Assembly (NCBI RefSeq): GCF_001194135.2
Contig: NC_068987.1
Location: 24,174,581 to 24,238,580, forward strand
Direction of reading: 5' to 3'
DNA length: 64,000 nucleotides
Source: Octopus bimaculoides
Lineage: Eukaryota
In this document: piece by piece, positions 855 through 62,493 of the stretch
Numbering within the stretch: the stretch's first letter is position 1
How the letters are laid out: each line of letters starts with the position of its first letter
Translations under genes and position numbers: made by a program
Notes under the pieces: generated by a model
Told to the model about the DNA's origin: nothing
Databases searched by the model: none
The model's input: only the letters and a program-made list of their open reading frames with translations

Positions 855-2069
855 ATGGAGGTGAAACTTTATGTGAATCAGGTTTGTGATCAAACACAGC
901 CTGAATCTAATGACATATCTCATCAAATATGTGTAGATCCACAGAAGAAATCATATCTCTTAAACATCAATAAGAAAACATTCACACAATCAAATGCCAT
1001 ATTGAAACAAAAGATGCTTCAGAAATGTTGGAAGAGGAAATATGTTTACAGTAAAACAATTGCTAAACTCTCTAAGAGTACTTTAACAAGTCAGAAAGTT
1101 TGTAAATGCTCAGTATGTGGTAAAATATTCTCTCAAAATTGTCACATGACTAAACACAAGTGTATACAGAGAAGCAAGAAAAAACACCATTGTGATATCT
1201 GTGGCAGAACCTTCTCTGAGAGCAGTACTTTGACTAATCATAAACGTATTCATACTGGTGAAAAGCCATACCACTGTGATATTTGCAGTAGAACATTCAC
1301 TCAGTATGGTCATTTGAGTAGACATAAATATACTCACTCAGGTGAGAAACCATATAACTGTGATATCTGTGGGAAATCATTCTCTCAGAGTGATAAATTA
1401 GCTATTCACAAACGTATTCACACAGGTGAAAAACCCTATCAGTGTGGTATTTGTGCTAAAACATTTTCTCGAAGTTCTGATTTGAATAGGCACAAGTACA
1501 TTCACACAAATGAGAAGCCATACAGCTGTGATGTCTGTGGGAAAACCTTCTCTGGGAGAAGTAATATGACTAACCACCAACGTACTCACACAGGTGAGAA
1601 ACCATACTACTGTGAAATCTGTGGAAAAACATTCTCTAGTAAATTATCTACACACAAACGAATCCATACAGGTGAAAAACCATACAACTGTGATATATGT
1701 GGAAAAAAATTCTCTCAGAATGGTCATTTAACTCAGCATTTACGTGTTCACACAGGTGAGAAACCATACCACTGTGATATTTGTGGTAAAACATTTTCTC
1801 AAAGTAGTCATTTAACACTTCATGTACGTGGTCACACAGGCGAGAAACCATATAGTTGTGATATTTGTGGTAAAACATTTTATGATAATCAGAGTTTAAC
1901 TCGTCATATACCTGTTCACACAGGTGAAAAACCATATCATTGTGATAGCTGTGATAAAAGTTTCTCTAAGAAAAAGATTTTGACTAATCACAAGCAAAAA
2001 ACACATAAAAAGCAAACCATAAAACAAGAGAATAAGTTGGAAGAATTTGTACAAATTATTACTTCATGA
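855..2069 (+). CDS. Poly-C2H2 zinc finger protein Z1 (404 aa, 11 fingers, one with a 2-aa helix deletion)
   Basis: Track ORF 834..2069 begins at a non-ATG codon. The ATG at 855 (MEVKL) aligns with the paralog starts. Repeated CxxC-x12-H-x3-H units with TGEKPY linkers. Confidence 0.93.
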   Translation: MEVKLYVNQVCDQTQPESNDISHQICVDPQKKSYLLNINKKTFTQSNAILKQKMLQKCWKRKYVYSKTIAKLSKSTLTSQKVCKCSVCGKIFSQNCHMTKHKCIQRSKKKHHCDICGRTFSESSTLTNHKRIHTGEKPYHCDICSRTFTQYGHLSRHKYTHSGEKPYNCDICGKSFSQSDKLAIHKRIHTGEKPYQCGICAKTFSRSSDLNRHKYIHTNEKPYSCDVCGKTFSGRSNMTNHQRTHTGEKPYYCEICGKTFSSKLSTHKRIHTGEKPYNCDICGKKFSQNGHLTQHLRVHTGEKPYHCDICGKTFSQSSHLTLHVRGHTGEKPYSCDICGKTFYDNQSLTRHIPVHTGEKPYHCDSCDKSFSKKKILTNHKQKTHKKQTIKQENKLEEFVQIITS

Positions 2070-2659
2070 AGTATAAGACATTTTATACAATAGAACTATT
2101 GAAAGTGGAGGAAGGTAGACAAGAGTCGTATGTTCATTCAACCATAACATTTTTCTTCCAGAACTTTCTTCAACACAGTACTGGAACTGAATGTAAATTT
2201 ACATATGTTTATGTAACTAGCTTACAGAGGCTTTATGTAAATAATAAAGTTATAATGTTTTATAATCAAACTTTATATAAACCTCTTCATTGATTCAATT
2301 TGGTTTAAAATTAATATCTGATCTGATTACACTGACATCTGTCACTATTTTGATGTTAAACAGTTGATAATTGTGACAGTTACTTTTGCCTCTGTGGATT
2401 AAAATTCCAATAATCTTGAAAAGCCATTTCATTAGCTCTTTCAGCCAAATATAAGTTTGTGATTTTGGAAGAAGAGTGATTAATTATAAAATTAATTTAA
2501 ATAGATTCTTTGTAGGTTATTTTGTTCAAATTGTCAAATATATTTCAAAAAACATAAATGAATGATATTTGGAATAGAGCAATGACTTGAAGAAGATGAC
2601 AGGGAAGTAGAAATCTGATTCAATGGAATTAGTAGCATCTGTTTAGACATAATTATAGC

Positions 2660-3540
2660 ATAGTCACTTGTTTACTCAGACCCTTGGCTCCTCCTAGGGC
2701 ATAATAATCTCTTTCCATCTACTCTTGTCCTGGGATTTCATCTCCAGTTTCCCCCCAGTTCCATCTTGATCTTCTCACTCTTCTTCAGGTTATATTGCTA
2801 GAAGTTCCTTGGGCTTCCTTTTATCCTTGGAGTTACACTTTAATGATTGCCTAGCAACATTGTATTAAACCACTTTGAAGAGTTATCCAATCCAGTGCCA
2901 CTTTCTTCATAAAATAGGGGGTTTGCTTCCACAAGACTATGTTTCTGATTCACTTGCTTTGAGGACATGACAGCAATATCTTTGTGTGAGGCATTTTCAT
3001 CTTTGTGTCCACTGTAAAGCTCTAAATCATCTGTTGAAAGTCTTTCTTGTCCTGCTTGAAGCCATCATGTTTCACTCAACCTGAGTATGGCAAGGTTGCA
3101 TCTCTTGCACTGGCCAAGCATTTGTGCTGTTTTGCCTCTTTCATATGTTGTGATGTTCTGTGAAACAGTTGTGACTTTGCTCATGGCTGTCAGGAAAGGT
3201 ATCGGCTGTGCAACATCCTTTCAGCTTGAGCTGCAATGCTTCATTCTCTCTTTGCAAGATCCATCTGATCCCCAAGTCTGTGAAACCAGCTTTTGATTCT
3301 TCTCTGACATTTCTGTAGTGAGTGTAGGTTTTTTTTTTTTTATGGTGAGGCTGTTAACCCCACACTAAACCTCTAGCCTAGAGGACTGGGGACTACCTTT
3401 TGGTCTGGATTTTATCCTTTGACCCTTCTAGTATGATTAAATCTACCAGGAAGTGAAAACTCCCTGCTAGTATAACTCTCAAGGTCATATAAGTGCAAAA
3501 ACGTACCTAACACAGTAAGGTGACAGTCCATGCGGGTGTA
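2660..3540 (-). mobile_element. Degenerate, internally deleted RTE-type LINE relic
   Basis: The reverse strand resembles the RTE C-terminal W..H.LR...GKRK.GRP region, and 3330-3540 resembles an RTE 5' UTR. No intact ORF. Confidence 0.35.
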
Positions 3541-4548: not shown

Positions 4549-4668
4549 GGATGGCAACACCAGGCTCCAATTAGATTGGAGCCGGGTGTTGCCATCCGGT
4601 TTCACCAGTCCTCAGTCAAATCGTCCAACCCATGCTAGCATGGAAAGCGGACGTTAAACGATGATGAT
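4549..4668 (+). mobile_element. 5'-truncated RTE-tailed SINE with a 23-bp fold-back at its 5' end
   Basis: 4572-4668 matches the reverse complement of the 20360 and 46250 elements. 4549-4571 is an inverted copy of 4575-4597. Confidence 0.75.
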
Positions 4669-7029: not shown

Positions 7030-7203
7030 TTGGTACAAGGCCAGGAATTTAGTGGGCAAGTTGATTTCATCAACCTCAGTGCTCAATTGGAACCTATTTT
7101 TCGACGACGAAAAGATGAAAGTCGACCTTGGCGGAATATAAAGGCGGGCGAAATACCGCTAAGCATTTTGCCCGGTATGCTAACGATTCTGCCAGCTCGC
7201 TGC
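7030..7203 (+). mobile_element. SINE fragment (family also at 18735-18952)
   Basis: Shares GATT(T/A)CATCAACCTCAGT...AAAGTC(G/A)ACCT...CTAAGCATTTTGCC...AACGATTCTGCCAGCTC with the 18735 copy. Confidence 0.65.
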
Positions 7204-12170: not shown

Positions 12171-12549
12171 GATATAACCTTGATTTTTTGTGAAATTAAG
12201 ATTAAAGCTATAAACAGTTTATAATTGAGTTATGGAACATGAAGATTTCATTGGTTTTGTTGGGAAGTCTTTTATATCTGTATAGCTTGAGAACTGGAGT
12301 CAGTTTTCAAGTTGCTGATTTTTAATTCCAAGATTGAACTCTAGCAAGAGAAACTGTCCCAATAAAATATCTTAAAACTGTTTCTTTACAATTGAGACAT
12401 CTACAGACTTTGTCAAGTATCATGTTTTTTTGTTTTCTCAGTAAGAGAAAATACATGGTAAATATTTATTGAAAAGTTTCAGAGAATTTAGTTTCCTTCA
12501 GTACACATTTGAAATTAAACAAACATTTTTAGATATTTGTAAGAAAATT

Positions 12550-13983
12550 ATGGAGGATAAACTGGATGAAAGCCAGGCTTCTGAAAAACAACCTGAATCT
12601 GATGACATAACTAATCAGGAGTGTGTAGATACACAGAAGAAAGCCTATCATTTTGACATTCGTAAGAAGACATTCTCACAATATAATGTCCTTCTTACAA
12701 GCATAAAACTTAAATATTCTAAAATGTGTAACAAAACATCTGCTAAAAATCGTTCATTCTCTAAGGGTGTTCAATCAGATCAGACTGGTTTTGAATGCTT
12801 AATCTGTGGTAAAACATTTTCTCGGAGATGTTATCTGAGAAGGCACAAAACTATACACAGAAGTATTAAACCATATCGATGTGACATTTGTGATAAAGCC
12901 TTTTCTCAGAGCAGCACTTTGACTAATCATAGACGTATTCATACTGATGAAAAGCCATATCATTGTAAGGTTTGTGGCAGAAGGTTTACACAGAATGGTC
13001 ATTTGAGTAGACACAAGTATATTCACTCAGGAGAGAAACCACACCGCTGCGACATCTGTGGGAAATCGTTCTCACAGATTGACAGTTTAACTCGTCACAA
13101 ACTTATTCATACGGGAGAAAAACCATATCAGTGTGGTATTTGTGGTAAAACATTCTCTCGAAGCTCTTATCTGAATGTTCACAAATCAGTTCACACAAAT
13201 GAAAGGCCACATCGTTGTGATGTCTGTGGTAAAGCATTCTCTGGAAGAAGTACTTTGACTAATCACAAACGTATTCACACTGGGGAAAAACCATACCATT
13301 GTGGTATCTGTGGTAAAACTTTCTCTGGAGGTAATAGTTTGACTAGTCACATACAAGGTCACACAGGAAATAAACCATACCACTGTGATATTTGTGGTAA
13401 AACATTCTCTAGCAGTAGTAGACTAACTAATCACATACGCATCCACACAGGTGAGAAACCTTACCACTGTAACACCTGTGGTAAAGCATTTTCTCAAAAT
13501 AGCCATTTAACTCAACATGTACGGGTTCATACAGGTGAGAAGCCACACCACTGTGATATATGTGGTAAAACATTCACTCAAAGAGGTCATTTAACGATTC
13601 ATATACGTGGGCATACAGGTGAAAGGCCATATAGCTGTGATATTTGTGGTAAAGCTTATGCTGATAATCAAAGTTTAACTCGTCACAAACCTGTTCACAC
13701 AGGTGACCATCCACATCGTTGTGATGTTTGTGGAAAAGCATTCACTCAGAGCACACATTTAAAAATTCATCTTCGTGGCCACACAGGTGAAAGACCATTT
13801 AGTTGTGATATTTGTGGTAAAACATTCTCTGATAATCAGCATTTAACTCGTCACAGACCTGTTCACACAGGTGAGAAACCATATGGTTGCGATATCTGTG
13901 ATAAAACTTTCTCTATAAAAAGGAGTTTGGCTAATCACAAGAAAAAGGTACATGGAAAACAAACCATAAAACAAGAGAAATAG
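12550..13983 (+). CDS. Poly-C2H2 zinc finger protein Z2 (477 aa, 14 fingers), paralog of Z1
   Basis: ORF 12469..13983 with ATG at 12550 (MEDKL). Fingers are colinear with Z1 and the C-terminal QTIKQE tail is shared. Confidence 0.93.
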   Translation: MEDKLDESQASEKQPESDDITNQECVDTQKKAYHFDIRKKTFSQYNVLLTSIKLKYSKMCNKTSAKNRSFSKGVQSDQTGFECLICGKTFSRRCYLRRHKTIHRSIKPYRCDICDKAFSQSSTLTNHRRIHTDEKPYHCKVCGRRFTQNGHLSRHKYIHSGEKPHRCDICGKSFSQIDSLTRHKLIHTGEKPYQCGICGKTFSRSSYLNVHKSVHTNERPHRCDVCGKAFSGRSTLTNHKRIHTGEKPYHCGICGKTFSGGNSLTSHIQGHTGNKPYHCDICGKTFSSSSRLTNHIRIHTGEKPYHCNTCGKAFSQNSHLTQHVRVHTGEKPHHCDICGKTFTQRGHLTIHIRGHTGERPYSCDICGKAYADNQSLTRHKPVHTGDHPHRCDVCGKAFTQSTHLKIHLRGHTGERPFSCDICGKTFSDNQHLTRHRPVHTGEKPYGCDICDKTFSIKRSLANHKKKVHGKQTIKQEK

Positions 13984-16794: not shown

Positions 16795-18125
16795 CACATC
16801 ATCATCAGCATTTAACTTTACTGGAAGGGTGAAGGATCCTGTTCGATATCTTGCTTACTAGGACCTTGGTCTTTGCTAAGTTTACTTTAAGACCCTTTGA
16901 TTCCAGGTTCTGTTTCCACACCTGGAATTTCTTTTCTAATTCTGTTCCAGATTCTGCTATGAGAGCAAGATCATCAGCATATAGTAGTTCCCATGAGCTT
17001 CCAGTCTTAAATTCCTGTTATGGCCTGGAGGACAACGATGAATAGGAGGGGGCTGAGGACCAAGCTTTGGTGAATACCTACTTGTTCACTAAATTCATCG
17101 CTGTACCAGTGGCCAACTCTTACCTTACCAACAGCACTCCTGTACGTGGCCTGTGCTGCTTTTACAAGCCAATCATCTATCCCTAGCTTCCACTTCCTTA
17201 GAGTCCAACATATCACAGATTGAGGTATTCTGTCAAAGGCTTTCTCTAGATCAACAAATGCCAAGTACAACAGCTTGTTCTTAGCTAAATACTCCTCTTG
17301 CAGTTGCCTGACTATGACAATATTATCTGTGGTACTTTTCCCTGGATTTCATCTGGTCTAATTCTGTTCCTAATTAATTGGGCTATAACTCTCTCTGCCA
17401 CTTTCATCACCTGGTCCAGCAATTTGATGCCTCTATAATTACTTCTATTTAAGGCATCTTCTTTGCCCTTGTAACAGCTGACTATGATACTGCTGTGCCA
17501 GTCACTAGGGATTATGCCTTCTTGCATAACCAGATTAACTATACAGGTAACTAGACTGTATCCATCTCTATCTGATATCTTAAGCATCTCAGCAGTGGCT
17601 CCTGATGGATCAGGGGCCTTTCCTGTCTTCATATTTTTAATTGCATTTTCTATGATGCTGTTGTCAACTAGACTAGCTGGTACCTCTGTTGGATTCACAT
17701 GAGGAAGATTCCCTTTCTCCCATTCATTCTCTGCATTTAATAGTTTTTCATAGTAGCTCTTCCATGCCACTTTCTTTTCAGGATCACTAAGAGCAAGTGT
17801 ACCACTGTCTGTACACACTTCTCTCCCACAACATCTTGATTATCTCTCACACACTGTGTAGCAAATCTGGAATACCTCAAGTATCTGATCTTTGTGCTGC
17901 AAGACATTGGCAGACTACTTTCCTTCTGCATCTGCCTATCTGAATATACCTGATGGCTAGTTTCTCTTTTAGCTATCTGATATGGTTTTTTGCTACCACC
18001 ATTCTTCCAGTCTTTCCAACCCCATCTCTTCTCTTTTATAATCTTGTTGACCTCACTCTTCCAGTGCCATGTGACCCTTGATCTAGTGGAAGCTTTGCTC
18101 CAACCACAGGTTTAATCTGTCATCT
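16795..18125 (-). mobile_element. RTE-type LINE reverse transcriptase fragment (pseudogenised)
   Basis: Track ORFs 17007..17270 (LAFVDLEKAFDRIP; VGIHQSLVLSPLLFIVV) and 17312..17818 (KTGKAPDPSG; NYRGIKLLDQVMKV). Confidence 0.9.
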
Positions 18126-21348: not shown

Positions 21349-22548
21349 TCAGCATTTTGATTTCTCATTTGTATGAACACGTCTGTGAGAAATCAAACTA
21401 CCACTCTGAGTGAAAGTTTTATCACAGATATCACAGTGGTAGGGTTTTTCCCCTGTATGAATACGTCTGTGAATCGTTACACTATTACTCCGAGTGAAAG
21501 TTTTACCACAGATATCACAGTGGTATGATTTCTCATTCGTATGAAAACGCCGGTGAGAAATCAAACTACCACTCTGAGTGAAAGTTTTATCACAGATATC
21601 ACAGTGGTAGGGTTTTTCCCCTGTATGAATACGTCTGTGAATAGTTACACTATTACTCCGAGTGAAATTTTTACCACAGATATCACATTGGTATGGTTTC
21701 TCATTTGTATGAATACTTCTATGATTAGTTAAAGTAGTACTCTGAGAGAAAGTTTTATCACAGATATCACAATGGTATGGTTTTTCACCAGTATGAATAC
21801 GTCTATGATCAAGCATGCTACCTCTGTGTAAGAAAGATTTACCACAGATATCACAATGATAGGGTTTTTCACCAGTATGAACACGTATGTGATAAGTTAA
21901 ACTACTGTGGTGAGCAAAATCTTTCCCACAGATCTCGCAATGGTATGGTTTTTCACCAGTGTGAACACGTATGTGATAAGTTAAGCTACTATGGTAAGCA
22001 AAATCTTTACCACAAACATCACAATGGTATGGTTTTTCCCCAGTATGAATTCGTTGATGCACAAGCATTCCATCTTTCTGTGAGAAGGATTTACCACAAA
22101 TCTCACAATGGTATGGTTTGTCATCTGTGTGAACACGTTTGTGAGTAATTAACTGATAACTCATTGAGAATGCTTTACCACAAATACCACATTGATGTCG
22201 TTTCTCACCTGTGTGAACACTTTTATGACTAATTAACTGTCCTCTCTCAGAGAATGTGTCACCACAGATATCACAGTGGTATGGTTTCTCACCTGTATGA
22301 ATACGTTTATGTACAGACAAAAAGCCTTTAACCATGAACTTTTTACCACAAATATCACATCGATAACGCAATGAACTTGTGTTAATAAATTTCGGTCCAC
22401 TGATATTACTATTATGCGTAAATGTTTTAGATGACTTATCAGGTAGTTTTAATTTCTTCCCAGTATTTATCAGTCTTTTATGAAATACACGAGTATTCTT
22501 GGAGAGGTTTTCACCCTCAACCTCACTCCCACACAGTTTATCTTCCAT
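21349..22548 (-). CDS. Poly-C2H2 zinc finger protein Z3 (399 aa, 12 fingers)
   Basis: Track ORF starts at TTG 22671. ATG at 22548 (MEDKLCG), with an alternative ATG at 22563. Twelve canonical fingers. Confidence 0.93.
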   Translation of the reverse strand: MEDKLCGSEVEGENLSKNTRVFHKRLINTGKKLKLPDKSSKTFTHNSNISGPKFINTSSLRYRCDICGKKFMVKGFLSVHKRIHTGEKPYHCDICGDTFSERGQLISHKSVHTGEKRHQCGICGKAFSMSYQLITHKRVHTDDKPYHCEICGKSFSQKDGMLVHQRIHTGEKPYHCDVCGKDFAYHSSLTYHIRVHTGEKPYHCEICGKDFAHHSSLTYHIRVHTGEKPYHCDICGKSFLHRGSMLDHRRIHTGEKPYHCDICDKTFSQSTTLTNHRSIHTNEKPYQCDICGKNFTRSNSVTIHRRIHTGEKPYHCDICDKTFTQSGSLISHRRFHTNEKSYHCDICGKTFTRSNSVTIHRRIHTGEKPYHCDICDKTFTQSGSLISHRRVHTNEKSKC

Positions 22549-23356: not shown

Positions 23357-23769
23357 GGCACTGTCATGGTATTAGCTGTCAGAAGTGAAAGTAGAAAAAT
23401 CTGACAAGGAACGTTACTGCTGGTTTGAGTTGATTCTTTGGCTACTGACAGCTAATACCATGACAGTGCCTTATTTTTTAATTGGAAACTGATCAGGGTT
23501 GAGGTATTTAATGCTTCTTACTACGCACTGGAGAGCTAGTCATACTTATTCTAGANNNNNNNNNNTGCGTTTTCTAATTTGATAAATTCTACGGACACAG
23601 AGGTGAACGAGTGATAGATAGATATATAGAGAGAGATAGATAGTGAGATAGACAGACAGACAGATAGATAGCTCCGGCTAGTCAGTAGCCAAAGAATCAA
23701 CTCAAACCAGCAGTAACGTTCCTTGTCAGTTCTACTTTCACTTCTGACAGCTAATACCATGACAGTGCC
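23357..23769. mobile_element. Merlin-like MITE (partly collapsed at an assembly gap)
   Basis: GGCACTGTCATGGTATTAGCTGTCAG termini and 8-bp TSD TTATTTTT (23349-23356 and 23770-23777). Same family as 38649-39229, in the opposite orientation. The superfamily is inferred from the GG termini and 8-bp TSD. Confidence 0.75.
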
Positions 23770-27849: not shown

Positions 27850-30800
27850 TAGGTCTTTGTGAATCCATGCAGTGGACTCCATTATAAAATAATTTTCTCT
27901 ATGTATTAAGTGTTGCCTTCTTTACACCAGAAACTGGAGATTCTAGCCTCCTACACTATTAACAAGTTTGATATTAGTTTATCAATTTATTTCTCAGCGA
28001 ACACAGAACATAAACTTTAGAGTTAAATACAGTATAAAAACATACTGTAGAACAAAGCATGTAAAATAGCATTATCTGAATAGACTCATTACAGTACTCT
28101 TTCAAAGGACTACAAAATAAAGAAGGAAGACTAGTCAGTGTGAACTGTAGAAGTGAGCTGTGTTTGTTTTATTGTTTATTAGAGTTGAAATCCCTCAAAT
28201 TTTTTAAGTTCAAGGTAAACCAAAGTTTTACAACCCAAATTACCAAATGCCTGGTTAAATATTTCAGTCAGGTTGAAGAACATAATAAACTGTTTGCAGT
28301 GCCATCTTTGCTTGTGTAGAAGAGTATACTGAGATAACGCTGCCTTTGGTTCATCAGTAGATCTATTCACAGATAATTAAATAGTCTTGATATGGTCTCA
28401 TGTATACAATGTGCACAATCAATGCAAGATGAATTCAATTTATTGATAGTTTAATATGTACTCTAGTATATATTTTAGACCAATCATGTTAGCTGCAATT
28501 TTGAAATTTTGAAGAAAACAATAGGCACATTTGTCTACATCAAACGAAACAAAAGAGATAAAGAGATTATAAAGAAGTGAAGAGATACCGGTAGCATCTC
28601 TGACGACTGTAGTAGTTTTACAGCTTATTTCCAGTGTTTGTGATCAGCCAAAATATTTATCAGGCAAGGTTTAAAACAGATTATATCTCAATGCTATGGT
28701 TACCTCAAAATATGAAGATGTATATGATGAAATGAAATTCGACACTGACAGAATGCTTCACCACAAATTTCACTGTGATAAACTTTCTTCTGAATCACAA
28801 CGATTAATATAGCTTCATATCTATCATCAGTTTATATAGAGTCAAATCTCACTTTGGATATGAAAATGGCTTGTTACAGGTAGTTTTTCCTATAGAAGGA
28901 AAATCAAATTCAACAATGCAAGTAAAGAGATTATTCATCACTTGAACATTGCTGCTACTGCATGCAGAGGCAAGTTGTTCCTAAACTGCAGTACATATTA
29001 CAGCATGGTACACTGGGTTGAGAAGAATATAAACTGTTGACATCACAATCAGTTATTCCTACACAGCAGAACCTATTTCAGCTAGATGTATTTAGTTGAG
29101 AAAAGAATACAAACTGACATTGCCACTTGGTATGTGCTATGCTCTTCATTCAGCGATCCATACTTTACTCAGAGCTACAACTTCTGAGAATTTGAATGTA
29201 TTTGTTTGTGATTTGAAATTCCATTTCAGTTTGTGGTTACTCATTCATGTGAACACGCTTATGGGAAGTTAAACTACCACTTTGAGTAAAAGTCTTATCA
29301 CAAATATCACAATGGAAGGGTTTTTCACCAGTATGAACACGTATGTGATTAGTTAAGCTACAACTATGAGCAAAATCTTTACCACAGATATCACAGTGGT
29401 AAGGTTTTTCACCAGTATGAATACGTTTATGATCAAGCATACTACATTTGTGTAAAAATGCTCTACCACAGATATCACAATGGTAGGGTTTCTCACCACT
29501 ATGAATACGCTTATGCTTATGCATAGTGCCTTTGCAAGAGAATGTTTTACCACAGATATCACAACAGTATGGTCTTTCACCAGTATGCATACGTTCATGT
29601 ATAAGCATACCATCTTTCTGTGAGAAGGATTTACCACAAAACTCACAGTGGTATGGTTTCTCATCTGTGTGAACACGTTTGTGAAGATTTAGCTGATAAC
29701 TTATTGAAAATGCTTTACCACAGATATCACAATGGAGTCGTTTCTCACCTGTGTGAACGCTTTTATGACTAATTAATTGTCCTCTCTCAGAGAATGCTTC
29801 ACCACAGATATCACAGTGGTATGGTTTCTCACCTGTATGAATACGTTTATGTACAGACAAAAAGCCTTTAACCATGAACTTTTTACCACAAATATCACAT
29901 CGATAACGCAGTGAACTTGTGTTAATAAATTTCTGTTCACTGATATTACTAAATGTTTTAGAAGACTTATCAGGTAGTTTTAATTTCTTTCCTGTATTTG
30001 TCAGTCTTTTATGAGATACACGAGTATTCTTGGAGAGGTTTTCACTCTCAACCTCACTCCCACACAGTTTATCTTCCATAATTTCTTTTTGCGCCAATAT
30101 TTCAAAAAAGAAGCAGATATTAGACACTACAGAAAAACAGTTGTAGTATAATGTCAAATCTCCTCTAATATGACCACCACAACCCAGCCAGTATATTTCC
30201 AATCAACATAACAATTGTTAATTAAATCAAATCTTTTCGAGTAATCCAATCACAATTAGATAAACAATGTCACAAGCTTTCTTGATGATTATGTCATTCT
30301 GTAGTCTTCAAAATTTTGTATATATGTAAATATATTTTCTCTCAATGTCACCAGAAAATCTGAAATTAAAAAAAAAAAAAACATAATAGATAAGCAATAA
30401 TGAACTAAAAAGACAGAAGTTACTTACAAGAAAATATTTACTGGTAGACATTAAAAATTAGTCTATTACCCACTTACCCACAAGAATGTTAGTGCTGTAT
30501 CTCTAATTTAAAACTGAACTATATTTTGATAAGCTTCAGCCTACTCAAATATTGTTAACCCTTTTGATATCAACCTACTCACAATCTTCTTTTGTAAGCC
30601 TCTGATCTTCAAAAAGAACACTCTCTTTATTGTAGTTTGATTTCCTACACAAAAACACTTCAGCAACCTAGAACACAAAGAGAGATGTATCCCAAGACCA
30701 TTATTCATTAAGCAAACCCTATTAAACTACTTTACACAATGTTACCTTATAAAATTAAACCAATCTACCACACACTAGTGTGTTAGCACTTATTTATCCT

Positions 30801-34987: not shown

Positions 34988-37215
34988 CAGACGATAAAGG
35001 AGTTATCGTCTGCTAAATACAGATTTCTAAAGGGAAATCTCTATCACTTAGTATCTTATCCCTTTTCGTGTTGTAATTTTCCTTCGTGTTCTATTCACAA
35101 AACCATCTAAATCACTTTTCTTTTCACGAAGACGACGTTTCAAGTCAACATTGAAGGTGAAGTACCTTATTAATTTCGTTTTTATTATTTACAAAATTAT
35201 AATTACTCATTCATCTATCTCAAAGTTAAAAATACAGATTTCTAAAAGGAAATCTCTATCACTTAGTATCTTATCCCTTTTCGTGTTCTAATTTTCCTTC
35301 GTGTTCTGTTCACAAAACCATCTAAAGTTTAAACTGAAGATGAAGTCCCTTACTGAATTTATTGAAAAATATTCAACAATATTAATTCACACCTTTAATA
35401 AAGTTATGGGTGATGGTAACTGTATGTTCAGAGCTCTGTCACTCTACCTCAAAAACAACAGAAACTACCGAACTCTTCCGGAAGAGTCCGTACGGTACAT
35501 ATGCAATAATTGGAAGTATTTTCATTCTTTTATTCCTAATAGTGCAATGCAGGAATACCAAGCATACATGAATAGGGATGGAACATACGACGGTAATGTT
35601 GAATTAGCTGCCATTAGTGGATTGTACGATATTGCAATTCAGGCTCATCACAAAAGTGACGATGAAATTCTTCTTCTTTTCATCATTTGTGGTCGAACAT
35701 TTACAGAAAGGAAGATTTCAGTGTTATATAGTGGCAAAATTGATAACGGCCACTGTGATGGTCTCTTTCCCTTAAACAATCATGAGTATGAAAGAAATAA
35801 AATATCACAAGTCAGTATAAAAAGACAAAAGAATGAGAATTCAAACATTTGATATGAAAATTGTAGAAGAAAGTAAAAACCATCGGAAAGTTAGGTTGCA
35901 AAAAATGATGGGACATTAGAGGAGAACAAGAAGGTGAAAAAGATAGAGAAATAAGATTGCAGAGAAAGAAGGAAAATTATAGAAATAAAAAAAGTACAAG
36001 AACATAAAAAAAGACTAAGAAAGACGATTGCAAAAAAGGAGAGAAAAAGGTAGAATAAATAGAAAATGAGAGTAAATGCGACCAAAAAATACGACTAAAA
36101 TGGAGAAAGCTTTTCAGGGAAAACCAGCAGAAGTATAGTCGATTTCAATGGCAAAGTGTAGCATTTAATTATGATACTAATCGTAATTATGCATCTGAAA
36201 AAATTGTCTCCTTGGGTTCTATGTGCAAGACATGTGAAAAGTGTAGTGCTAGGAATCATTAGGTATGTGCTGTTCTGAAGGTAAAGTCCATTTACCAATA
36301 ATTGAGCCTCCAGAACTTATAAAACATCTTCAGAATCAATGTGTATGCGTGTGCGCGCGCATGTATATGTATGTACTTCTCCACTTTCTATGTTTTAAAT
36401 ACCAGATATTACAGTTCTGCAAATAAAAGGGTTTTTTTTGTTTTTTTTTTAAATTGCAAATGCTTATCACTTTTTATCCTGCTTAATTTTAAAGTTTTTA
36501 TTATTTTGAAATGAAGAACACAAACATAGATGCTGAGCCAGTGACTAAACTAGTCGATTTGGCATGTTCATGGATAACAGACCGTTCAGCTCTGTAAAAC
36601 CTTATATGTTCCTGAGAAACAGACTGAATCATACCGACTCTAGATTTCGGTGAGATATACAATATCTTATGTTTTCTGTTGATAAAGCCGATAAAAGAGG
36701 TATTGAATCTGGTATATATGCCTTTATAAAGACTACCAAAAACAACTGCATGTCTATAAGCAAGTTTAAAAGACGGCTTGATGATAATGACAGGCAACTA
36801 GAGGGAAGTTGAAATATGATGATGGCCAATGTCCGTGGTTCCAAGCAATTTTGGTCTAGAAAATGTTCAGGATTGATGGCTATGGAAGAAAAATATGGCC
36901 CGGCCCTCTTGTTCCTAACTTTGTCTTATGCAGAGTACTTTTGGCCGGATCTGCGTGAATTTTTGGAAACGTTGAACGCAGATGGACCAAACATTACTAC
37001 AAAGCGCAACAATGAGCTGTATGCTGTTGTGGCAGTTAGTGAGCATTTCCACCATCGATTTGCCACCTTTATGAGAGAGGTCATTAGGCACAAAAACAGT
37101 CCTTTCGGCCTGGTCGAGCACTTCTTTCAGAGATTGGTATACCAGATGAGAGGTGCACATGTTCACATGAGACTGTGGATTAAAGGTGGCCCGTTTATGG
37201 ACAGAGACTACAACC
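34988..37215 (+). mobile_element. Truncated Helitron-family element: OTU protease, basic coiled coil, CxxC..CC zinc motif, Rep (HUH) fragment
   Basis: GDGNCMFRAL OTU motif. AFNY...SLGSMCKTCEKC...GMCCSEGKVHLP at about 36160-36310. RGSKQFW...LFLTLSYAE..WPDL and YQMRGAHVHMRLW Rep motifs. Multiple stops and frameshifts; boundaries are approximate. Confidence 0.8.
35340..35852 (+). CDS. OTU-family cysteine protease domain ORF (Helitron-borne; may be a pseudogene)
   Basis: ATG at 35340. GDGNC with Cys codon 35421-35423 and a C-terminal GHCD with His codon 35751-35753. Ends at a probable frameshift stop. Confidence 0.6.
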   Translation: MKSLTEFIEKYSTILIHTFNKVMGDGNCMFRALSLYLKNNRNYRTLPEESVRYICNNWKYFHSFIPNSAMQEYQAYMNRDGTYDGNVELAAISGLYDIAIQAHHKSDDEILLLFIICGRTFTERKISVLYSGKIDNGHCDGLFPLNNHEYERNKISQVSIKRQKNENSNI

Positions 37216-40834: not shown

Positions 40835-42031
40835 ATGGAAGAGAGATTGTGTGAGGGTCAGGATTATGGAGAGACACTGCTTGAAACTAGTGATTTATCT
40901 CATCAGATACAAGTAGATACAGAAAAGTCATACACCTATAACACCTTTGGAGAGACTTTCATCAAAAGTAGTGACATCATTGAACATAAATTACATCACA
41001 CAATTTCAAAACTCTACCTTTGTGATGTTTGTGGGAAAAGATTCACTACAAACAGTTCTTTATCTTTACATAAACGTACTCATACAGGTGAGAAACCATA
41101 CAATTGTAATATTTGTGGTAAAACGTTCTCTTATAGTGGTATTCTAACATGCCATAAACGAATTCATACAGGTGAGAAACCATACCATTGTGACAAGTGT
41201 GGAAAAACATTTGCTCGGAATGATCATTTAACCATTCACAAACGCGTTCATGCTGATGAGAAACCATACCATTGTGATATCTGTGGAAAAACATTTTCTC
41301 ATGATAGTCACTTAACTATTCACAAGCATGTACACACTAGTGAAAAACCATACAATTGTGATATTTGTGGTAAAACATTTCCTTACAGGGGTAAATTGAC
41401 AAGCCACAAACGTATCCACAGTGGTGAGAAACCATACCATTGTGATACTTGTGGTAAAACATTTTCACACAATGGTGACTTGACTGTTCACAAACGAGTT
41501 CACACAGGTGAAAAACCATACCATTGTGATGTCTGTGATGAAACGTTTTATCGGAGTAGTAAGTTAACTGTTCACAAACGTGTTCACACAGGAGAAAAAC
41601 CATATCACTGTGATATCTGTGGTAAAACATTCTCTGACAATAGAGATTTAACTCGTCATATCCGTATTCACACAGGGGAAAAACCATACCACTGTGATAT
41701 TTGTGGTAAAACATTCTCTCAGAATGGTAGCTTAAATATTCATCAACGTGTTCACACAGGTGAGAAACCGTACCACTGTGATATCTGTGATAAAACATTC
41801 TCCCATAACGGTAGTTTAACTGTTCACAAACGAATACACACCGGAGAGAAACCATATAGCTGTTATATCTGCAGTAAAACATTCTCTGATAATCGAGATT
41901 TAACTCGTCATATCCGCATTCACACAGGTGAAAAACCATACAACTGTAATATTTGTGGTAAAACATTCTCTCAGAATAGTAATTTAACTATTCACAAACG
42001 TGCTTGTGTAAATGACAAATCACATCACTGA
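40835..42031 (+). CDS. Poly-C2H2 zinc finger protein Z5 (398 aa, 12 fingers, last one C2HC)
   Basis: ATG at 40835 (MEERLCE). TGEKPY-linked fingers, ending HKRAC. Confidence 0.93.
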   Translation: MEERLCEGQDYGETLLETSDLSHQIQVDTEKSYTYNTFGETFIKSSDIIEHKLHHTISKLYLCDVCGKRFTTNSSLSLHKRTHTGEKPYNCNICGKTFSYSGILTCHKRIHTGEKPYHCDKCGKTFARNDHLTIHKRVHADEKPYHCDICGKTFSHDSHLTIHKHVHTSEKPYNCDICGKTFPYRGKLTSHKRIHSGEKPYHCDTCGKTFSHNGDLTVHKRVHTGEKPYHCDVCDETFYRSSKLTVHKRVHTGEKPYHCDICGKTFSDNRDLTRHIRIHTGEKPYHCDICGKTFSQNGSLNIHQRVHTGEKPYHCDICDKTFSHNGSLTVHKRIHTGEKPYSCYICSKTFSDNRDLTRHIRIHTGEKPYNCNICGKTFSQNSNLTIHKRACVNDKSHH

Positions 42032-48836: not shown

Positions 48837-48846
48837 NNNNNNNNNN

Positions 48847-50122: not shown

Positions 50123-51820
50123 TTAAAGTGGTATGGTTTCTTTCTTGCATGAGTATATTTGTGAAGTCAATTCATTATTATGAGAAAATTTATTACCAGA
50201 TATCACAATATTATAGTCTCTTGTGTGAACACGCATGTGAGTTGTCACATTTCCATTACGAGAGAATGATTTACCACATACATCACAATGATATGGTTTC
50301 TCTCCTGTGTGAATTCTTTTATGACTAGTCATATTTCCAACAGAGGAGAATTTTTTGCCACAGATATCACAATGGTATGGCTTCTCACCTGTGTGAATAC
50401 GTATATGCCTAGTCAAATGAAAATTACGGGAAAACTTTTTACCACAGATATCACAATGATATGGTTTCTCACCTGTATGAATACGTTTGTGAAGAGTTAG
50501 TTTAGAAGTGGAAAAAAATGTCTTACCACAGATATCACAAGGATAGAGTTTCTCACCTGTGTGAGTAAGCATATGAGAAGTTAAACTAGGCTTTTGGGAG
50601 TATGCTTTACCACAAATATCACAGTGGTATGGTTTTTCACCTGTGTGGCAACGTTTATGAATAGTCAATTCACCGTTACGTGAGAATGTTGTACCACAGA
50701 TATCACAATGGTATGGTTTCTCACCTGTATGTATACGTTTGTGAACTGTCAAAGCACTACTACATGTGAAAGTTTTACCACAGATATCACAATGGTAGGG
50801 TTTTTCACCTGTGTGAGTACGTTTGTGAACAGACAAGGTATTACTACGAGGGAATGTTTTCCCACATATATCACAGTGGTATGGTTTCTCACCTGTGTGA
50901 CTACGTTTGTGAATAGTCAATTCACCATTACGAGAGAATGTTTTACCGCAGATATCACAGTGAAAGGGTTTCTCACCTGTGTGAGTACGTTTATGGTTAA
51001 CTAAATGTACATGCATATAAAATTTGTTACCACAGATATCACAATGGTATGGTTTTTCACCTGTATGCTTACGTTTATGAACATTCACTTCATAATTACG
51101 AGAGAATGTTTTACCACAGATATCACAGTGGTATGGTTCCTCACCAGTATGAGTACGTTTGTGAACAGTTAAAATACCATTACGAGAGAATGTTTTACCA
51201 CAGATATCACAATGGTATGGCTTCTCACCTGTGTGAATACGTTTGTGACTAATCACATTTCCATTGTATGTGAATGATTTACCACAGATATCACAATGGT
51301 ATGGTTTCTCACCTGTGTGAATACGTTTGTGACTAGTCAAATGCTCGTTCCAAGAAAATTTTTTACCGCAGACATTACAGTAGTATGGTTTCTCCCCTGT
51401 GTGAGTACGCTTATGACTAGATAAATAATCATTCCGAGAGAATGTTTTACCACAGATATCACAGTGGTATGGTTTCTCACCTGTATGTGTACGTTTGTGT
51501 CTCATCAAAATTCTACTGTTAGAAAACGTTTTACAACAGATATCACATTGGTAGAGTTTTTTAACTGTGTGAGTACATTTATGTGATAACAATGAACCCT
51601 TTGTAGTGAACCCTTTGGTACAGACTTTACAATGGTAAACATTTGGACTTGTGTAAAGTGACTTGTGTTTACTAATATATTTATGCTTTATAAATGTTTT
51701 TTTCTTGATGTCACAGTGTTTAGATTTCTTCTTTAAATCTTCCTTAGTTTTGTGAGAAAAGTCATTAGTCTCACAGTGTGTTTCATTATAAACCTGATTT
51801 TCACACAGTCTCTTCTCCAT
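50123..51820 (-). CDS. Poly-C2H2 zinc finger protein Z6 (565 aa, 17 fingers)
   Basis: ATG at 51820 (MEKRLCE). Seventeen fingers followed by a frameshifted decayed finger. Confidence 0.93.
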   Translation of the reverse strand: MEKRLCENQVYNETHCETNDFSHKTKEDLKKKSKHCDIKKKTFIKHKYISKHKSLYTSPNVYHCKVCTKGFTTKGSLLSHKCTHTVKKLYQCDICCKTFSNSRILMRHKRTHTGEKPYHCDICGKTFSRNDYLSSHKRTHTGEKPYYCNVCGKKFSWNEHLTSHKRIHTGEKPYHCDICGKSFTYNGNVISHKRIHTGEKPYHCDICGKTFSRNGILTVHKRTHTGEEPYHCDICGKTFSRNYEVNVHKRKHTGEKPYHCDICGNKFYMHVHLVNHKRTHTGEKPFHCDICGKTFSRNGELTIHKRSHTGEKPYHCDICGKTFPRSNTLSVHKRTHTGEKPYHCDICGKTFTCSSALTVHKRIHTGEKPYHCDICGTTFSRNGELTIHKRCHTGEKPYHCDICGKAYSQKPSLTSHMLTHTGEKLYPCDICGKTFFSTSKLTLHKRIHTGEKPYHCDICGKKFSRNFHLTRHIRIHTGEKPYHCDICGKKFSSVGNMTSHKRIHTGEKPYHCDVCGKSFSRNGNVTTHMRVHTRDYNIVISGNKFSHNNELTSQIYSCKKETIPL

Positions 51821-59994: not shown

Positions 59995-60445
59995 GCTTCA
60001 TCATCATCATCGTTTTAATTTCCAGACTTGCAGAGGTCAGACAGATTTCATTGTGGCACATTTTTTATGGCTGGATACTCTTTCAGTTGCAAACCTTCAC
60101 TTGCCTCCAAGCAAGCTAATTTCCCTATGGCCATTTTCACAAAAGATTGGAAATGAAAGAACCGTTTTTATGATGGTGATGCTCATTTGCAACTATCACA
60201 TGACGTCAAGACAAGGCAACACAAACACACACACACTCTCTCTCTCTCTCTCACACACATGCACACACACACACACACATTCATACAACAGATTTCTTTC
60301 AGTTTCTGCCTACCAAATCCACTCACAAGATTTTGTTCATCCCTGGACTGTAGTAGAAGACACTTTCCCAAGGTGGCATGCCATGGGACCGAACTTGAAA
60401 CTGTGTGCTTGAGAAGCAAATTTCTTAACCACACAGCTATATCTG
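59995..60445 (-). mobile_element. Composite SINE (tRNA-derived head with RTE-type tail)
   Basis: (CAT)n tail at about 59995 and AGAAGACACTTTCCCAAGGTGGCATGC core at about 60355. Confidence 0.7.
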
Positions 60446-61218
60446 TTCCATAAATACATAAAGAAGATCTCACTCTATTTGTTGATATTTATTATATTCT
60501 GTTTCCCTTAACTTCTCATCCCATTTCACATGTTATGACCAGTTCTCTACCTCTGGTCTGTCCTCTCAAACTTCTATTCTTATCTATCATAAATCTCATG
60601 ATATTTTTCCATAGATATCTTTGGTCTCTTTCTTCTAGTTCTATCTTTCATTATCTCTGATGTCTCTTGTCACTAGTCTCTTCTGTGTTCACATTTAATT
60701 ATCTCTCATTTTTTACTATCTCTTTTTTTTTAGTGCATCTGGTAATAACTGAGTTGACAATTTCTCACACAAGACACATCGAGATACATGAAAAATATGA
60801 AAAACTGAAGAATGATTTAATAGAGGAAGTACAACAGTGGTTATCTAACCTAAAGAAATATTCCAACATTAATTGAAAAATGAATGGAAAATTTAGCACA
60901 GTTGATGTAAATATTCACCACATGTTATATGCTTGAGTTGATTCATATAAATTCAAGGATTAAATCTTGGAGAAGAAATCTGTCCTCAAACATAGTTGAA
61001 AGATGTTATGTATAACCGAGACAAAAGTACAAATATTTTCACATATTTATGTCAGATAAAATAGACTGTATTATCAGTAAGTTTTGATCTCCTGACTATT
61101 CAGTAGTCTAGCATGTTAATCACAGTGTCTCTTTGCCTTCTAACCACACAATTTATTTTCACAAAATTATATAGTAATAATAAAAAGGAATAATATTTTA
61201 TGACTGACAAATCACATT

Positions 61219-62493
61219 ATGGAGGAGAGACTGTCTGAGAATCGGGTTTATAAGGAAACACAATGTGAGAATAATGAGTTTTCTCACCAAACTGAAGGAG
61301 ATGTAGGGAAGAAATCATACCACTGTGACATCAAAGGAAAGACATTCATGAAAAGTAAGGACCGCAATGAAGACAAACCATTTCAAGCAAGTTCAAATGT
61401 TTACTGTTCTAAAATATGTGGTAAAGGATTCATCAGAAGTTGTTCTGTATCTCCACATCAGTGTACTGAGACATGTGAGAAACAATATCACTGTGGTATA
61501 TGTGGTGAAGCATTTTCTTGGAATGAAGATGAACATTCAGCTAGTCATGTATGCACTCATACAGGGGAAAAATCATACTGTTGTGAATTCTGTGGCAAAA
61601 CATTTGCTTATATTGGAATTGCAAATACCCACAAACGTACACACACAGGTGAGAAACCATTCCACTGTGATATCTGTGGGAAAGTATTCTCTCGTAAGGG
61701 TATCTTAACTGTTCACAAACGTACACACACAGGTGAGAAACCATACCACTGTGATATCTGTGGTAAAACATTCTCTCGTAATAGCCAAGTGATTGTTCAT
61801 AAGCGTAGTCATACAGGTGAGAAACCATACCAATGTGATATCTGTGGTAACAAATTTTCTATGCATGTACATTTAGTTAATCATAAACGTACTCACACAG
61901 GAGAAAAACCCTTCCACTGTGATATCTGCGGTAAAACATTCTCTCGTAATGCTGAATTAACTATTCATAAACGCAGTCATACAGGTGAGAAACCATACCA
62001 ATGTGATATCTGTGGGAAAACATTCCCTCGTAAAAATACTTTGACTATTCACAAACGTACTCACACAGGGGAGAAACCATACCACTGTGATATATGTAGT
62101 AAAACATTTTCTTGTAATAGTGACTTGACTGTTCACAAACGTATTCACACAGGTGAGAAACCATACCATTGTGATATCTGCGGTACAACATTTTCTCGTA
62201 ATGATAAATTAACTATTCACAAACGTAGCCATACAGGTGAGAAGCCATTTTCCTGTGATATCTGTGGTAAAACATTCTCTCAGAAGCCTAGTTTAACTTC
62301 TCATATACTTACTCACACAGGTGAGAAACAGTACCCTTGTGATATCTGTAGTAAAAGTTTTTCTACAAATTCTAATTTAACTATTCACAAACGTATTCAT
62401 ACAGGTGAGAAACCATACCATTGTGATATTTGTGGTAAAAAGTTTTCTCGCAATTTTCATTTGACTAGACACATAAGCATTCACACAATTTAA
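61219..62493 (+). CDS. Poly-C2H2 zinc finger protein Z7 (424 aa, about 12 fingers plus degenerate N-terminal ones), inverted paralog of Z6
   Basis: ORF 61219..62493. Fingers are colinear with Z6 F4-F15 and share the rare helices MHVHLVN, QKPSLTS and RNFHLTR. Confidence 0.93.
   Translation: MEERLSENRVYKETQCENNEFSHQTEGDVGKKSYHCDIKGKTFMKSKDRNEDKPFQASSNVYCSKICGKGFIRSCSVSPHQCTETCEKQYHCGICGEAFSWNEDEHSASHVCTHTGEKSYCCEFCGKTFAYIGIANTHKRTHTGEKPFHCDICGKVFSRKGILTVHKRTHTGEKPYHCDICGKTFSRNSQVIVHKRSHTGEKPYQCDICGNKFSMHVHLVNHKRTHTGEKPFHCDICGKTFSRNAELTIHKRSHTGEKPYQCDICGKTFPRKNTLTIHKRTHTGEKPYHCDICSKTFSCNSDLTVHKRIHTGEKPYHCDICGTTFSRNDKLTIHKRSHTGEKPFSCDICGKTFSQKPSLTSHILTHTGEKQYPCDICSKSFSTNSNLTIHKRIHTGEKPYHCDICGKKFSRNFHLTRHISIHTI

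What the first reader, a model, noticed from the sequence alone, without database searches (positions are those of the whole stretch)
855..61347. A fixed-length 42-43 aa N-terminal leader shared by all seven KRAB-less zinc-finger proteins: candidate lineage-specific effector module
Seen: from the ATG to a (K/E)TF anchor the seven proteins align with at most a one-residue gap. Z1 MEVKLYVNQVCDQTQPESNDISHQICVDPQKKSYLLNINKKTF; Z2 MEDKLDESQASEK-QPESDDITNQECVDTQKKAYHFDIRKKTF; Z3 MEDKLCGSEVEGENLSKNTRVFHKRLINTGKKLKLPDKSSKTF; Z4 nearly as Z3; Z5 MEERLCEGQDYGETLLETSDLSHQIQVDTEK-SYTYNTFGETF; Z6 MEKRLCENQVYNETHCETNDFSHKTKEDLKKKSKHCDIKKKTF; Z7 MEERLSENRVYKETQCENNEFSHQTEGDVGKKSYHCDIKGKTF. The last 13 aa look like a dead finger (KKSYHCDIKGKTF vs EKPYHCDICGKTF), and H-x4-D-x-x-K-K mimics the H-x4-H-T-G-E-K end of a preceding one. 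Established: clustered poly-ZNF families in other lineages carry N-terminal effectors (KRAB, SCAN, ZAD, FiNZ). Inference: this acidic leader, possibly built from decayed fingers, keeps its length while finger number ranges from 8 to 17. It may recruit a cofactor, dimerise or control turnover.
Basis: partly seen in the sequence, partly recalled or inferred. Interest (0 to 1): 0.72.

Follow-up and report, generated by a model that had tools for sequence, protein, structure and literature searches.

The report
Octopus zinc-finger leader is decayed fingers
The shared 42-43-residue start of seven clustered octopus zinc-finger proteins is real, but it is mostly two worn-out zinc fingers kept in the 28-residue repeat phase, and only its first ten residues look selectively maintained.

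Summary
The window is Octopus bimaculoides chromosome CM046607.1. It carries seven single-exon, KRAB-less C2H2 genes, and their products start with the quoted 42-43 aa leaders. Both assembly gaps are intergenic.

The leader is not a separate domain by origin. Residues 31-61 are a decayed finger: 809 in-register hits in generic ZNFs against at most 2 for column-shuffled profiles. Residues 1-30 line up with a linker plus a finger in the predicted phase (z=4.1, P~1e-4). The Met sits where the T of TGEKPY would be. The first intact finger starts at residue 62, which is 6+28+28. Inherited periodicity and common descent therefore explain the "fixed length".

Related leaders occur on other chromosomes and in O. 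sinensis and O. vulgaris. There the second unit is an intact finger, and the length from the Met to the first finger ranges from 24 to 41 residues.

Selection is patchy. dN/dS is 0.24 for codons 2-10 (p=0.0015), about 1.3 for codons 11-30 and 0.37 for codons 31-43. Two relatives carry frameshifts inside the leader.

Whether the conserved acidic N-terminal decapeptide (ME-x-K/E-L-C-E-N/S-x-V) works as an effector is untested. No paper I found describes it.

The parts
855..1037 (+). Z1 N-terminal decayed-finger region, codons 1-61.
   Evidence: Followed by a further non-finger linker and a degenerate finger.
12550..12729 (+). Z2 N-terminal decayed-finger region, codons 1-60. Leader is 12550-12675; decapeptide is 12550-12579.
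   Evidence: One-codon gap at column 12-14.
22366..22548 (-). Z3 N-terminal decayed-finger region, codons 1-61. Leader is 22420-22548; decapeptide is 22519-22548.
   Evidence: I-N-T-G-K-K-L at residues 27-33 mirrors I-H-T-G-E-K-P. First intact finger Cys at residue 64.
29906..30079 (-). Z4 N-terminal decayed-finger region, codons 1-58. Leader is 29951-30079; decapeptide is 30050-30079.
   Evidence: A 3-codon deletion after KTF puts the first intact finger Cys at residue 61.
40835..41014 (+). Z5 N-terminal decayed-finger region, codons 1-60. Leader is 40835-40960; decapeptide is 40835-40864.
   Evidence: First intact finger Cys at residue 63.
51638..51820 (-). Z6 N-terminal decayed-finger region, codons 1-61. 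Leader is 51692-51820; decapeptide is 51791-51820.
   Evidence: K-H-C-D-I-K-K-K-T-F keeps the first Cys of finger B. First intact finger Cys at residue 64.
61219..61401 (+). Z7 N-terminal decayed-finger region, codons 1-61. Leader is 61219-61347; decapeptide is 61219-61248.
   Evidence: An in-frame TGA lies 18 nt upstream with no AG in between. Two more degenerate fingers follow at residues 62-119.
855..2069 (+). Z1 coding sequence, 404 aa, 9 canonical fingers
12550..13983 (+). Z2 coding sequence, 477 aa, 14 fingers
21349..22548 (-). Z3 coding sequence, 399 aa, 12 fingers
   Evidence: The public gene call uses a non-conserved ATG 15 nt upstream.
29237..30079 (-). Z4 coding sequence, 280 aa, 8 fingers
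40835..42031 (+). Z5 coding sequence, 398 aa, 11-12 fingers
50123..51820 (-). Z6 coding sequence, 565 aa, 17 fingers
61219..62493 (+). Z7 coding sequence, 424 aa, 11 fingers

Best explanation
The seven genes are tandem paralogs of the octopus-specific C2H2 expansion. Each is one coding exon that consists of a zinc-finger array from its first codons onward.

The 'leader' is the worn N-terminal edge of that array. The Met lies at the T position of a former TGEKPY linker, so M-E-x-K-L-C corresponds to T-G-E-K-P-Y. Residues 6-33 are a finger that has lost all four zinc ligands (finger A). Residues 34-61 are a second decayed finger (finger B) that keeps Y-x-C and G-K-T-F remnants. Intact fingers follow in the same 28-residue phase.

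The constant length is inherited from this periodicity and from one common ancestor. It is not maintained as a separate module. Selection acts only on the first ten residues (ME-x-K/E-L-C-E-N/S-x-V) and on the beta-hairpin remnant of finger B. The acidic 20 residues between them drift.

Shown: the finger B homology, the phase, the distribution within Octopus, and the selection pattern.

Inferred: the finger A origin, and that the tail is now a flexible acidic extension. Its conserved N-terminal peptide may serve as a short contact or stability motif.
For: A leader profile searched against 1.84 billion proteins hits generic ZNF arrays in many stretches. It aligns without gaps to two consecutive fingers, for example EdkLcesqvysetq...tgKKsylldikkkTF against EKKLYECNDCGKTF...TGEKPYECNECGKAF.

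Columns 31-63 give 809 domain hits above 5 bits in 257 generic ZNFs, against at most 2 for 20 column-shuffled profiles. Of these, 783 are in the predicted register, and both halves are significant separately.

Columns 1-30 were tested in the a-priori register against the window's 77 intact finger units. The score was -4.0 against a permutation null of -27.4 +/- 5.6 (z=4.1, P~1e-4). Register 0 was the best of 28 cyclic shifts, with the next at -14.9.

The first intact-finger Cys sits at residue 63/64 in Z3, Z5 and Z6, which is the exact phase; Z4 is at 61 after a 3-codon deletion. In Octopus relatives, finger B is an intact first finger directly after a 29-33 aa leader.

Pooled NG86 dN/dS values are 0.24 for codons 2-10 (8 pairs, p=0.0015), 1.32 for codons 11-30 and 0.37 for codons 31-43 (p=0.03). 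Identity between subfamilies is 0.44 in columns 1-10 and 0.15 in columns 11-30.

The start codon is supported in three ways. In-frame stops lie upstream with no AG before the ATG (Z7 at -18; the O. sinensis Z3-like gene at -6). No splice acceptor is conserved. Gene models in three species start at this Met.
Against: Finger A is not detected by ordinary searches. A finger HMM scores the leaders no better than shuffles, hhalign gives P=0.28, and a leader 1-30 HMM gives 3 hits against at most 2 in controls. Its support therefore rests on one register-specific test.

The selection estimates come from few substitutions: 32 in codons 2-10. AlphaFold was uninformative, with pLDDT 38 even over real fingers because the alignment has only 7 sequences, so 'flexible tail' is an inference.

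No RNA data were available to confirm the transcript structure. The family size and the distribution outside Octopus could not be measured.
Confidence: 0.7

Rival explanations
1. The leader, or at least its first ~30 acidic residues, is an Octopus-specific effector module analogous to KRAB or FiNZ. It would recruit a cofactor, dimerise the protein or set its turnover. It would have been exapted from a dead finger.
For: The N-terminal position, the acidity (pI 4.1-5.5 in most copies) and the absence of any Pfam match fit this reading. The motif ME-x-[EK]-L-C-E-[NSD]-x-[VIF] recurs on at least three O. bimaculoides/O. sinensis chromosomes and in O. vulgaris. Codons 2-10 have dN/dS 0.24 with plentiful synonymous change (pS 0.35), so the constraint acts on the protein. 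In-frame indels are depleted. FiNZ is likewise a short (28 aa), Glu-rich N-terminal sequence with no similarity to known domains (PMC10547256).
Against: Codons 11-30 evolve neutrally at dN/dS 1.32. Length varies from 24 to 41 residues between subfamilies, and some copies change the decapeptide (MENESSEIKI) or lack the leader altogether (MSRKIRKPYHC). The O. vulgaris Z1 ortholog has a 5-bp deletion in the leader, and a Z7-like metagenomic copy has a 2-bp deletion. No fold was predicted. No functional data exist.
Confidence: 0.25
2. The leader is a purely neutral relic. It looks conserved only because the duplications are recent or because gene conversion homogenises the 5' ends.
For: Nucleotide identity in the 200 nt upstream is about the same as in the leader: Z3/Z4 89-93% against 94%, Z1/Z2 70-80% against 77%, Z2/OvA (its O. 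vulgaris relative at L006:8403) 92-97% against 93%. Pooled dN/dS for codons 1-30 is 0.63, which is not significantly below 1 (p=0.12). Leader dS is lower than dS for the rest of the gene in several pairs.
Against: Codons 2-10 have dN/dS 0.24 (p=0.0015), and the same decapeptide survives between subfamilies whose columns 11-30 share only 15% identity. Codons 31-43 have dN/dS 0.37.
Confidence: 0.15
3. The ATG is not the true start. An upstream coding exon, possibly carrying a real effector domain, is spliced onto the leader.
For: Polypyrimidine-AG sites lie 16-70 nt upstream of several ATGs, and the frame stays open upstream in Z2, Z3 and Z4. A-rich codons just before the Met look conserved.
Against: Z7 has an in-frame TGA at -18 and the O. 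sinensis Z3-like gene has TAA at -6, with no AG before the ATG in either. Z1, Z5 and Z6 also have stops within 54 nt. The candidate acceptors are not conserved between orthologs, for example Z2 against its O. vulgaris relative. The ATG and a -3 purine/+4 G context are conserved in nearly all copies. RefSeq and other models in three species start at this Met, and the two O. sinensis neighbours are single-exon calls from it.
Confidence: 0.05

Closest known systems
Degenerate C2H2 fingers at the edges of poly-zinc-finger arrays (described for mammalian KRAB-ZNF clusters, PMC2865497)
   Same: The units stay in the array's 28-residue phase. They keep linker and hydrophobic remnants but have lost the Cys/His zinc ligands. 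They sit next to intact fingers in tandemly duplicated genes.
   Different: Here the decayed units form the very N-terminus, with the start codon inside a former linker. The same decay state is shared by many paralogs across chromosomes and species. The first ten residues are under purifying selection.
[quoted passage not shown]
   Same: Both are short, N-terminal, acidic and lineage-specific. Both lack similarity to known domains and head a large tandemly expanded ZNF family.
   Different: FiNZ-ZNFs have knock-down evidence for transposon repression; nothing functional is known here. This leader is traceable to decayed fingers, varies in length between subfamilies, and is constrained over only ~10 residues. 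Sequence similarity to FiNZ could not be tested, because no FiNZ model or sequence was available.
KRAB, SCAN and ZAD domains of clustered ZNF families
   Same: All occupy the position N-terminal to a finger array in rapidly duplicating clustered genes.
   Different: There is no Pfam match to any of them in the leaders or the whole proteins. The leader is much shorter, has no predicted fold, and lies in the same exon as the fingers.

Membership tests
C2H2 zinc finger (as a decayed copy) | Cys-x2-Cys ... His-x3/4-His zinc ligands | tested here: not met
   Unit A has none of the four ligands in register: S/N/G/D at Cys1, Y/C/E/S at Cys2, Q/K at His1 and D/N at His2. Unit B keeps at most the first Cys, in Z6 and Z7. 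These are relics, not working fingers.
C2H2 zinc finger (as a decayed copy) | 28-residue periodicity in phase with the neighbouring fingers | tested here: met
   The Y positions fall at residues 6, 34 and 62, and the first intact Cys at 63/64. Of 809 hits with columns 31-63, 783 are in the predicted register. Register 0 is the best of 28 shifts for columns 1-30.
C2H2 zinc finger (as a decayed copy) | Detectable sequence similarity to finger profiles | tested here: inconclusive
   Unit B is strongly similar when tested from the leader side, although Pfam finger models do not reach the leaders. Unit A fails the HMM and hhalign tests but passes the register-specific permutation test at z=4.1.
KRAB / SCAN / ZAD / BTB ZNF-associated domains | Match to the Pfam family model | tested here: not met
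   No such family appears at E<=10 in the leaders or at E<=0.001 in the full proteins.
FiNZ | Sequence similarity to the 28-aa cyprinid FiNZ consensus | not testable with these tools
   No FiNZ sequence or model was available. Only the description in PMC10547256 was read.
FiNZ | Short, acidic N-terminal sequence conserved across a lineage-specific ZNF expansion | tested here: inconclusive
   The leader is acidic and N-terminal in 3 Octopus species. Only ~10 residues are conserved, and the length varies.
Octopus C2H2 expansion (Albertin 2015; PMC12513265) | Tandemly clustered multi-finger C2H2 genes in an Octopus genome | tested here: met
   The window maps to O. bimaculoides CM046607.1. It holds seven genes in 62 kb, with an eighth just upstream of the window.

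The most novel reading that the evidence does not exclude
The conserved N-terminal decapeptide ME-x-[EK]-L-C-E-[NSD]-x-[VI], together with its acidic tail, is an Octopus-specific ZNF-associated effector or degron motif exapted from a dead finger. It would be the first such motif in cephalopods. It would give a handle on how the ~1,800 domain-less octopus zinc-finger proteins act on chromatin or are turned over.
Probability: 0.25. Interest if true: 0.65.

Novelty: new member of a known kind. Interest (0 to 1): 0.38.

Why it matters
Octopus genomes hold one of the largest C2H2 expansions known. The genes have no recognised effector domain, so how they regulate anything is open.

This work shows that the apparent leader is mostly array debris. 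That removes a tempting but wrong domain boundary: the KTF anchor falls inside a dead finger.

It also isolates a ten-residue N-terminal peptide that is kept by selection across subfamilies, chromosomes and three species. That peptide is the piece worth testing. The case also gives a clean example of a start codon sitting in a former inter-finger linker.

Tried and rejected
That tool is insensitive to short queries, so I could not count leader-bearing proteins or test squids and Nautilus.
2. A full-length Z7 query was flooded by vertebrate ZNFs and gave no octopus hits.
3. An exact look-up of the seven proteins returned 'not in the collection'. I treat this as uninformative: the references included the stop codon, and the same proteins were found by the contig look-up.
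4. A finger HMM against single leaders, hhalign and a leader 1-30 HMM were all non-significant for finger A.
5. I looked for a conserved splice acceptor upstream of the ATG and found none.
6. AlphaFold2 on Z7 residues 1-126 with the 7-sequence alignment gave pLDDT 38 everywhere, so no structural conclusion is drawn.
7. No assembled transcript carrying any of these proteins was on record. The one short ENA contig proved to be genomic DNA from a metagenome.
8. dN/dS for the finger arrays ('REST') is only approximate, because arrays of different length cannot be aligned finger for finger.


Full report
**Where the window comes from and what it holds**

Exact look-ups place the window on Octopus bimaculoides chromosome CM046607.1 (GCA_001194135.2), at about 24.17-24.24 Mb. 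It contains seven long ORFs that Pfam assigns only to C2H2 zinc-finger families. There is no KRAB, SCAN, ZAD or BTB match. The conserved ATGs are at 855(+), 12550(+), 22548(-), 30079(-), 40835(+), 51820(-) and 61219(+). No further finger or leader motif lies outside these seven genes. An eighth, Z2-like gene lies just upstream of the window.

**Assembly gaps**

The N runs at 23556-23565 and 48837-48846 are intergenic. The first is 1,008 nt upstream of the Z3 ATG. The second is 1,277 nt downstream of the Z6 stop and sits inside a (TA)n microsatellite. No finger-like coding sequence lies within 900 nt of either gap. They do not touch the finding.

**The observation**

They align from the Met to (K/E)TF with at most a one-residue gap: 43 residues in five genes and 42 in Z2 and Z5. 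Finger numbers of 8 to 17 are also correct.

**Is the Met the real start?**

- Z7 has an in-frame TGA 18 nt upstream and no AG between it and the ATG.
- An O. sinensis Z3-like gene has TAA at -6.
- Z1, Z5 and Z6 have in-frame stops within 54 nt.
- Polypyrimidine-AG sites occur 16-70 nt upstream in some copies, but they are not conserved between orthologs or paralogs.
- The ATG and its -3 purine/+4 G context are conserved in nearly all copies.
- Public gene calls for Z1, Z2, Z4, Z6 and Z7 start at this Met. The Z3 call starts at a non-conserved ATG 15 nt upstream.
- RefSeq or other models in O. sinensis, O. vulgaris and O. bimaculoides also start with ME..., and two O. sinensis neighbours are single-exon calls from it.
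- No RNA evidence could be obtained. An upstream coding exon is therefore unlikely but not formally excluded.

**What the leader is**

The leader has no Pfam match. A 63-column profile (leader plus the stretch up to the first finger) was searched against 1.84 billion representative proteins and gave 1,275 hits. Most are ordinary ZNF arrays, many of them marsupial KRAB-ZNFs, matched in 5-20 stretches each. The alignments are ungapped over 55-60 residues against two consecutive canonical fingers. This gives the following map:

- M1-E2-x3-K4-L5-C6 corresponds to T-G-E-K-P-Y.
- Residues 6-33 correspond to one finger, unit A.
- Residues 34-61 correspond to a second finger, unit B.

I tested the two parts separately against 257 generic ZNF proteins, using column-shuffled profiles as controls.

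*Unit B.* Columns 31-63 gave 809 domain hits above 5 bits, against at most 2 in any of 20 controls. Of these, 783 were in the predicted register. Columns 31-43 and 44-63 were each significant alone.

*Unit A.* Columns 1-30 were not detectable by HMM or profile-profile searches. However, the repeat phase fixes a single a-priori register. In that register, the mean ungapped BLOSUM62 score against the window's 77 intact linker+finger units is -4.0. The column-permutation null is -27.4 +/- 5.6 (z=4.1, P~1e-4). Register 0 is the best of all 28 cyclic shifts, and the next best scores -14.9. The matching positions are these:

- K4.
- The hydrophobic residue at position 10.
- (K/E)-T at positions 13-14, corresponding to G-K-T-F.
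- The hydrophobic residue at 21 followed by S/T at 22.
- D28 at the second-His position.
- T-G-K-K at positions 29-32.

Z3's I-N-T-G-K-K-L is nearly I-H-T-G-E-K-P. In Z3, Z5 and Z6 the first intact finger begins at residue 61-62, with its first Cys at 63/64, which is the same phase. Z4 is shifted by a 3-codon deletion.

I conclude that the N-terminal ~61 residues are two decayed fingers with the start codon in a former linker. Confidence is about 0.95 for unit B and about 0.7 for unit A.

**Distribution**

Among the 150 listed hits, every protein matched at its own N-terminus is from Octopus (O. sinensis, O. vulgaris or O. bimaculoides). The loci around them show leader-bearing genes on other chromosomes:

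- L005: two genes, MENELCENKF...
- L007: three genes.
- L008: O. bimaculoides CM046629, MESELCQDEV... and MENESSEIKI...
- L009: MENELCENQI... and MENDLCKNQF....

In these subfamilies unit B is an intact first finger (…GKTSYHCDICGKSF). This independently confirms that the window's KKSYHCDIKGKTF is a dead finger.

The length from the Met to the first finger is 29-33 residues in most. It is 24-26 in a variant class (MEKSEKLxELI..., L010) and 41 in one gene. One neighbouring ZNF has no leader (MSRKIRKPYHC). The fixed length is therefore a property of this clade, not of the family. I could not count members genome-wide or test other cephalopods.

**Selection**

Pairwise Nei-Gojobori estimates put the leader at dN/dS 0.26-0.55 in most pairs, against 0.2-0.4 for the rest of the genes. 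Pooled results split by region were as follows.

| Codons | Pairs pooled | dN/dS | p |
|---|---|---|---|
| 2-10 | 5 sister pairs | 0.20 | 0.0055 |
| 2-10 | 8 pairs (three added from other subfamilies) | 0.24 | 0.0015 |
| 11-30 | 5 sister pairs | 1.32 | not below 1 |
| 31-43 | 5 sister pairs | 0.37 | 0.03 |

For codons 2-10 in the 8-pair set, pS is 0.35 and pN is 0.11. Identity between subfamilies is 0.44 in columns 1-10 and 0.15 in columns 11-30.

Nucleotide identity in the 200 nt upstream is about as high as in the leader. Much of the visible similarity is therefore simply recent common descent. In-frame indels are absent in 645 pair-nt of leader, where 3.9 would be expected at the upstream rate (P=0.02). 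This comparison is biased, because the upstream DNA has A/T runs.

Two relatives carry frameshifts inside the leader. One is a 5-bp deletion in the O. vulgaris Z1 ortholog, whose finger array is also broken. The other is a 2-bp deletion in a Z7-like copy on a metagenomic scaffold. Both may be pseudogenes or assembly errors.

**Other properties**

Residues 1-30 are acidic in most copies (pI 4.1-5.5). Z3 and Z4 are near neutral at 6.5. AlphaFold2 with the 7-sequence alignment gave pLDDT 38 throughout, including over real fingers, so it says nothing either way.

**Comparison with what is known**

Degenerate fingers within and beside ZNF arrays are well documented in mammalian KRAB-ZNF clusters. 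The closest functional analogue would be FiNZ, a 28-aa Glu-rich N-terminal sequence of cyprinid ZNFs. The two papers on octopus or metazoan ZNF expansions that I read do not mention any N-terminal motif in cephalopod ZNFs, and further searches found none.

**Verdict**

The guess that the leader derives from decayed fingers is right, and it extends to the whole leader. The 'fixed-length effector module' reading is not supported as stated. What remains unexplained and worth testing is a ten-residue N-terminal peptide under purifying selection, at the head of many Octopus zinc-finger proteins.

Noticed in passing
window 35301-35852 (+): A 183-aa ORF with an OTU-like cysteine protease domain (Pfam PF02338, E=5e-10) sits between Z4 and Z5. 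It may be part of a mobile element or a gene fragment.
   Followed up: partly
window 17312-17818 (-): A 168-aa ORF with no Pfam hit. By eye it resembles the segment just before the reverse-transcriptase domain of non-LTR retrotransposons (…KTGKAPDPSG…NYRGIKLL…). This rests on my recollection and was not tested.
   Followed up: partly
L006:9946-10640 (O. vulgaris OX597820.1): The ortholog of Z1 has a 5-bp deletion in leader codons 21-23 and further frame breaks in the finger array. The public annotation splits it into a 171-aa protein that starts at an internal out-of-frame ATG (MTYRICVDP...) and a 113-aa protein. It is either a pseudogene or an assembly error.
   Followed up: partly
L007:10001-10210 (O. 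sinensis CM016865.1): The Z3/Z4-like gene has an in-frame TGA inside its first finger (CEICGK*F). The RefSeq model XP_029639418.1 avoids it with an intron.
   Followed up: partly
L011:1-579 (ENA metagenome scaffold ERZ23491055): A Z7-like copy is colinear with the Z6/Z7 upstream region. It has a 2-bp deletion in codon 6 of the leader and a stop where the first finger should begin. The octopus-like DNA is in a sample labelled as a metagenome.
   Followed up: partly
window 677-700 and 12354-12377 (+): A conserved upstream block (CTGTCCTAATAMAATATCTTGAAA) lies about 155-200 nt before the ATGs of Z1 and Z2 and their O. sinensis/O. vulgaris relatives. In several pairs the -200..-100 region is more conserved than -100..0. 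It may be a promoter element.
   Followed up: partly
L010:9980-10501 and L010:265-891 (O. sinensis CM016876.1); also P0138 and P0262: A second N-terminal type occurs in Octopus ZNFs: MEKSEKL(Q/K)ELI..E, 24-26 residues before the first finger. It may be related to the ME-x-E-L-C-E leader, with P0172 (MESEKKMVESELYEDRV...) as an intermediate.
   Followed up: no
P0181 (XP_029654435.1, O. sinensis, partial): In this model a finger array reads without a stop into ...RSERKIMENELRRSEVECK... followed by a new finger. The leader is therefore internal. This could be a fused tandem pair or an annotation artefact.
   Followed up: no
L001:17041-20208, about 5.8-8.9 kb beyond the window's 3' end: A 508-aa gene with HTH_Tnp_Tc5 and DDE_1 domains (a pogo/Tc5-like transposase) lies next to the cluster.
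   Followed up: no
window 61402-61575 (+): In Z7 the two units after the leader (residues 62-119) are also degenerate: the second His is replaced by E in one, and the other has a 2-residue insertion. Four decayed or impaired units therefore precede the first canonical finger.
   Followed up: partly
L008:28985-30385 (-) (O. bimaculoides CM046629.1): A 16-finger ZNF starts only 8 residues before its first finger (MSRKIRKPYHC), again inside a linker-like sequence, and has no leader.
   Followed up: no
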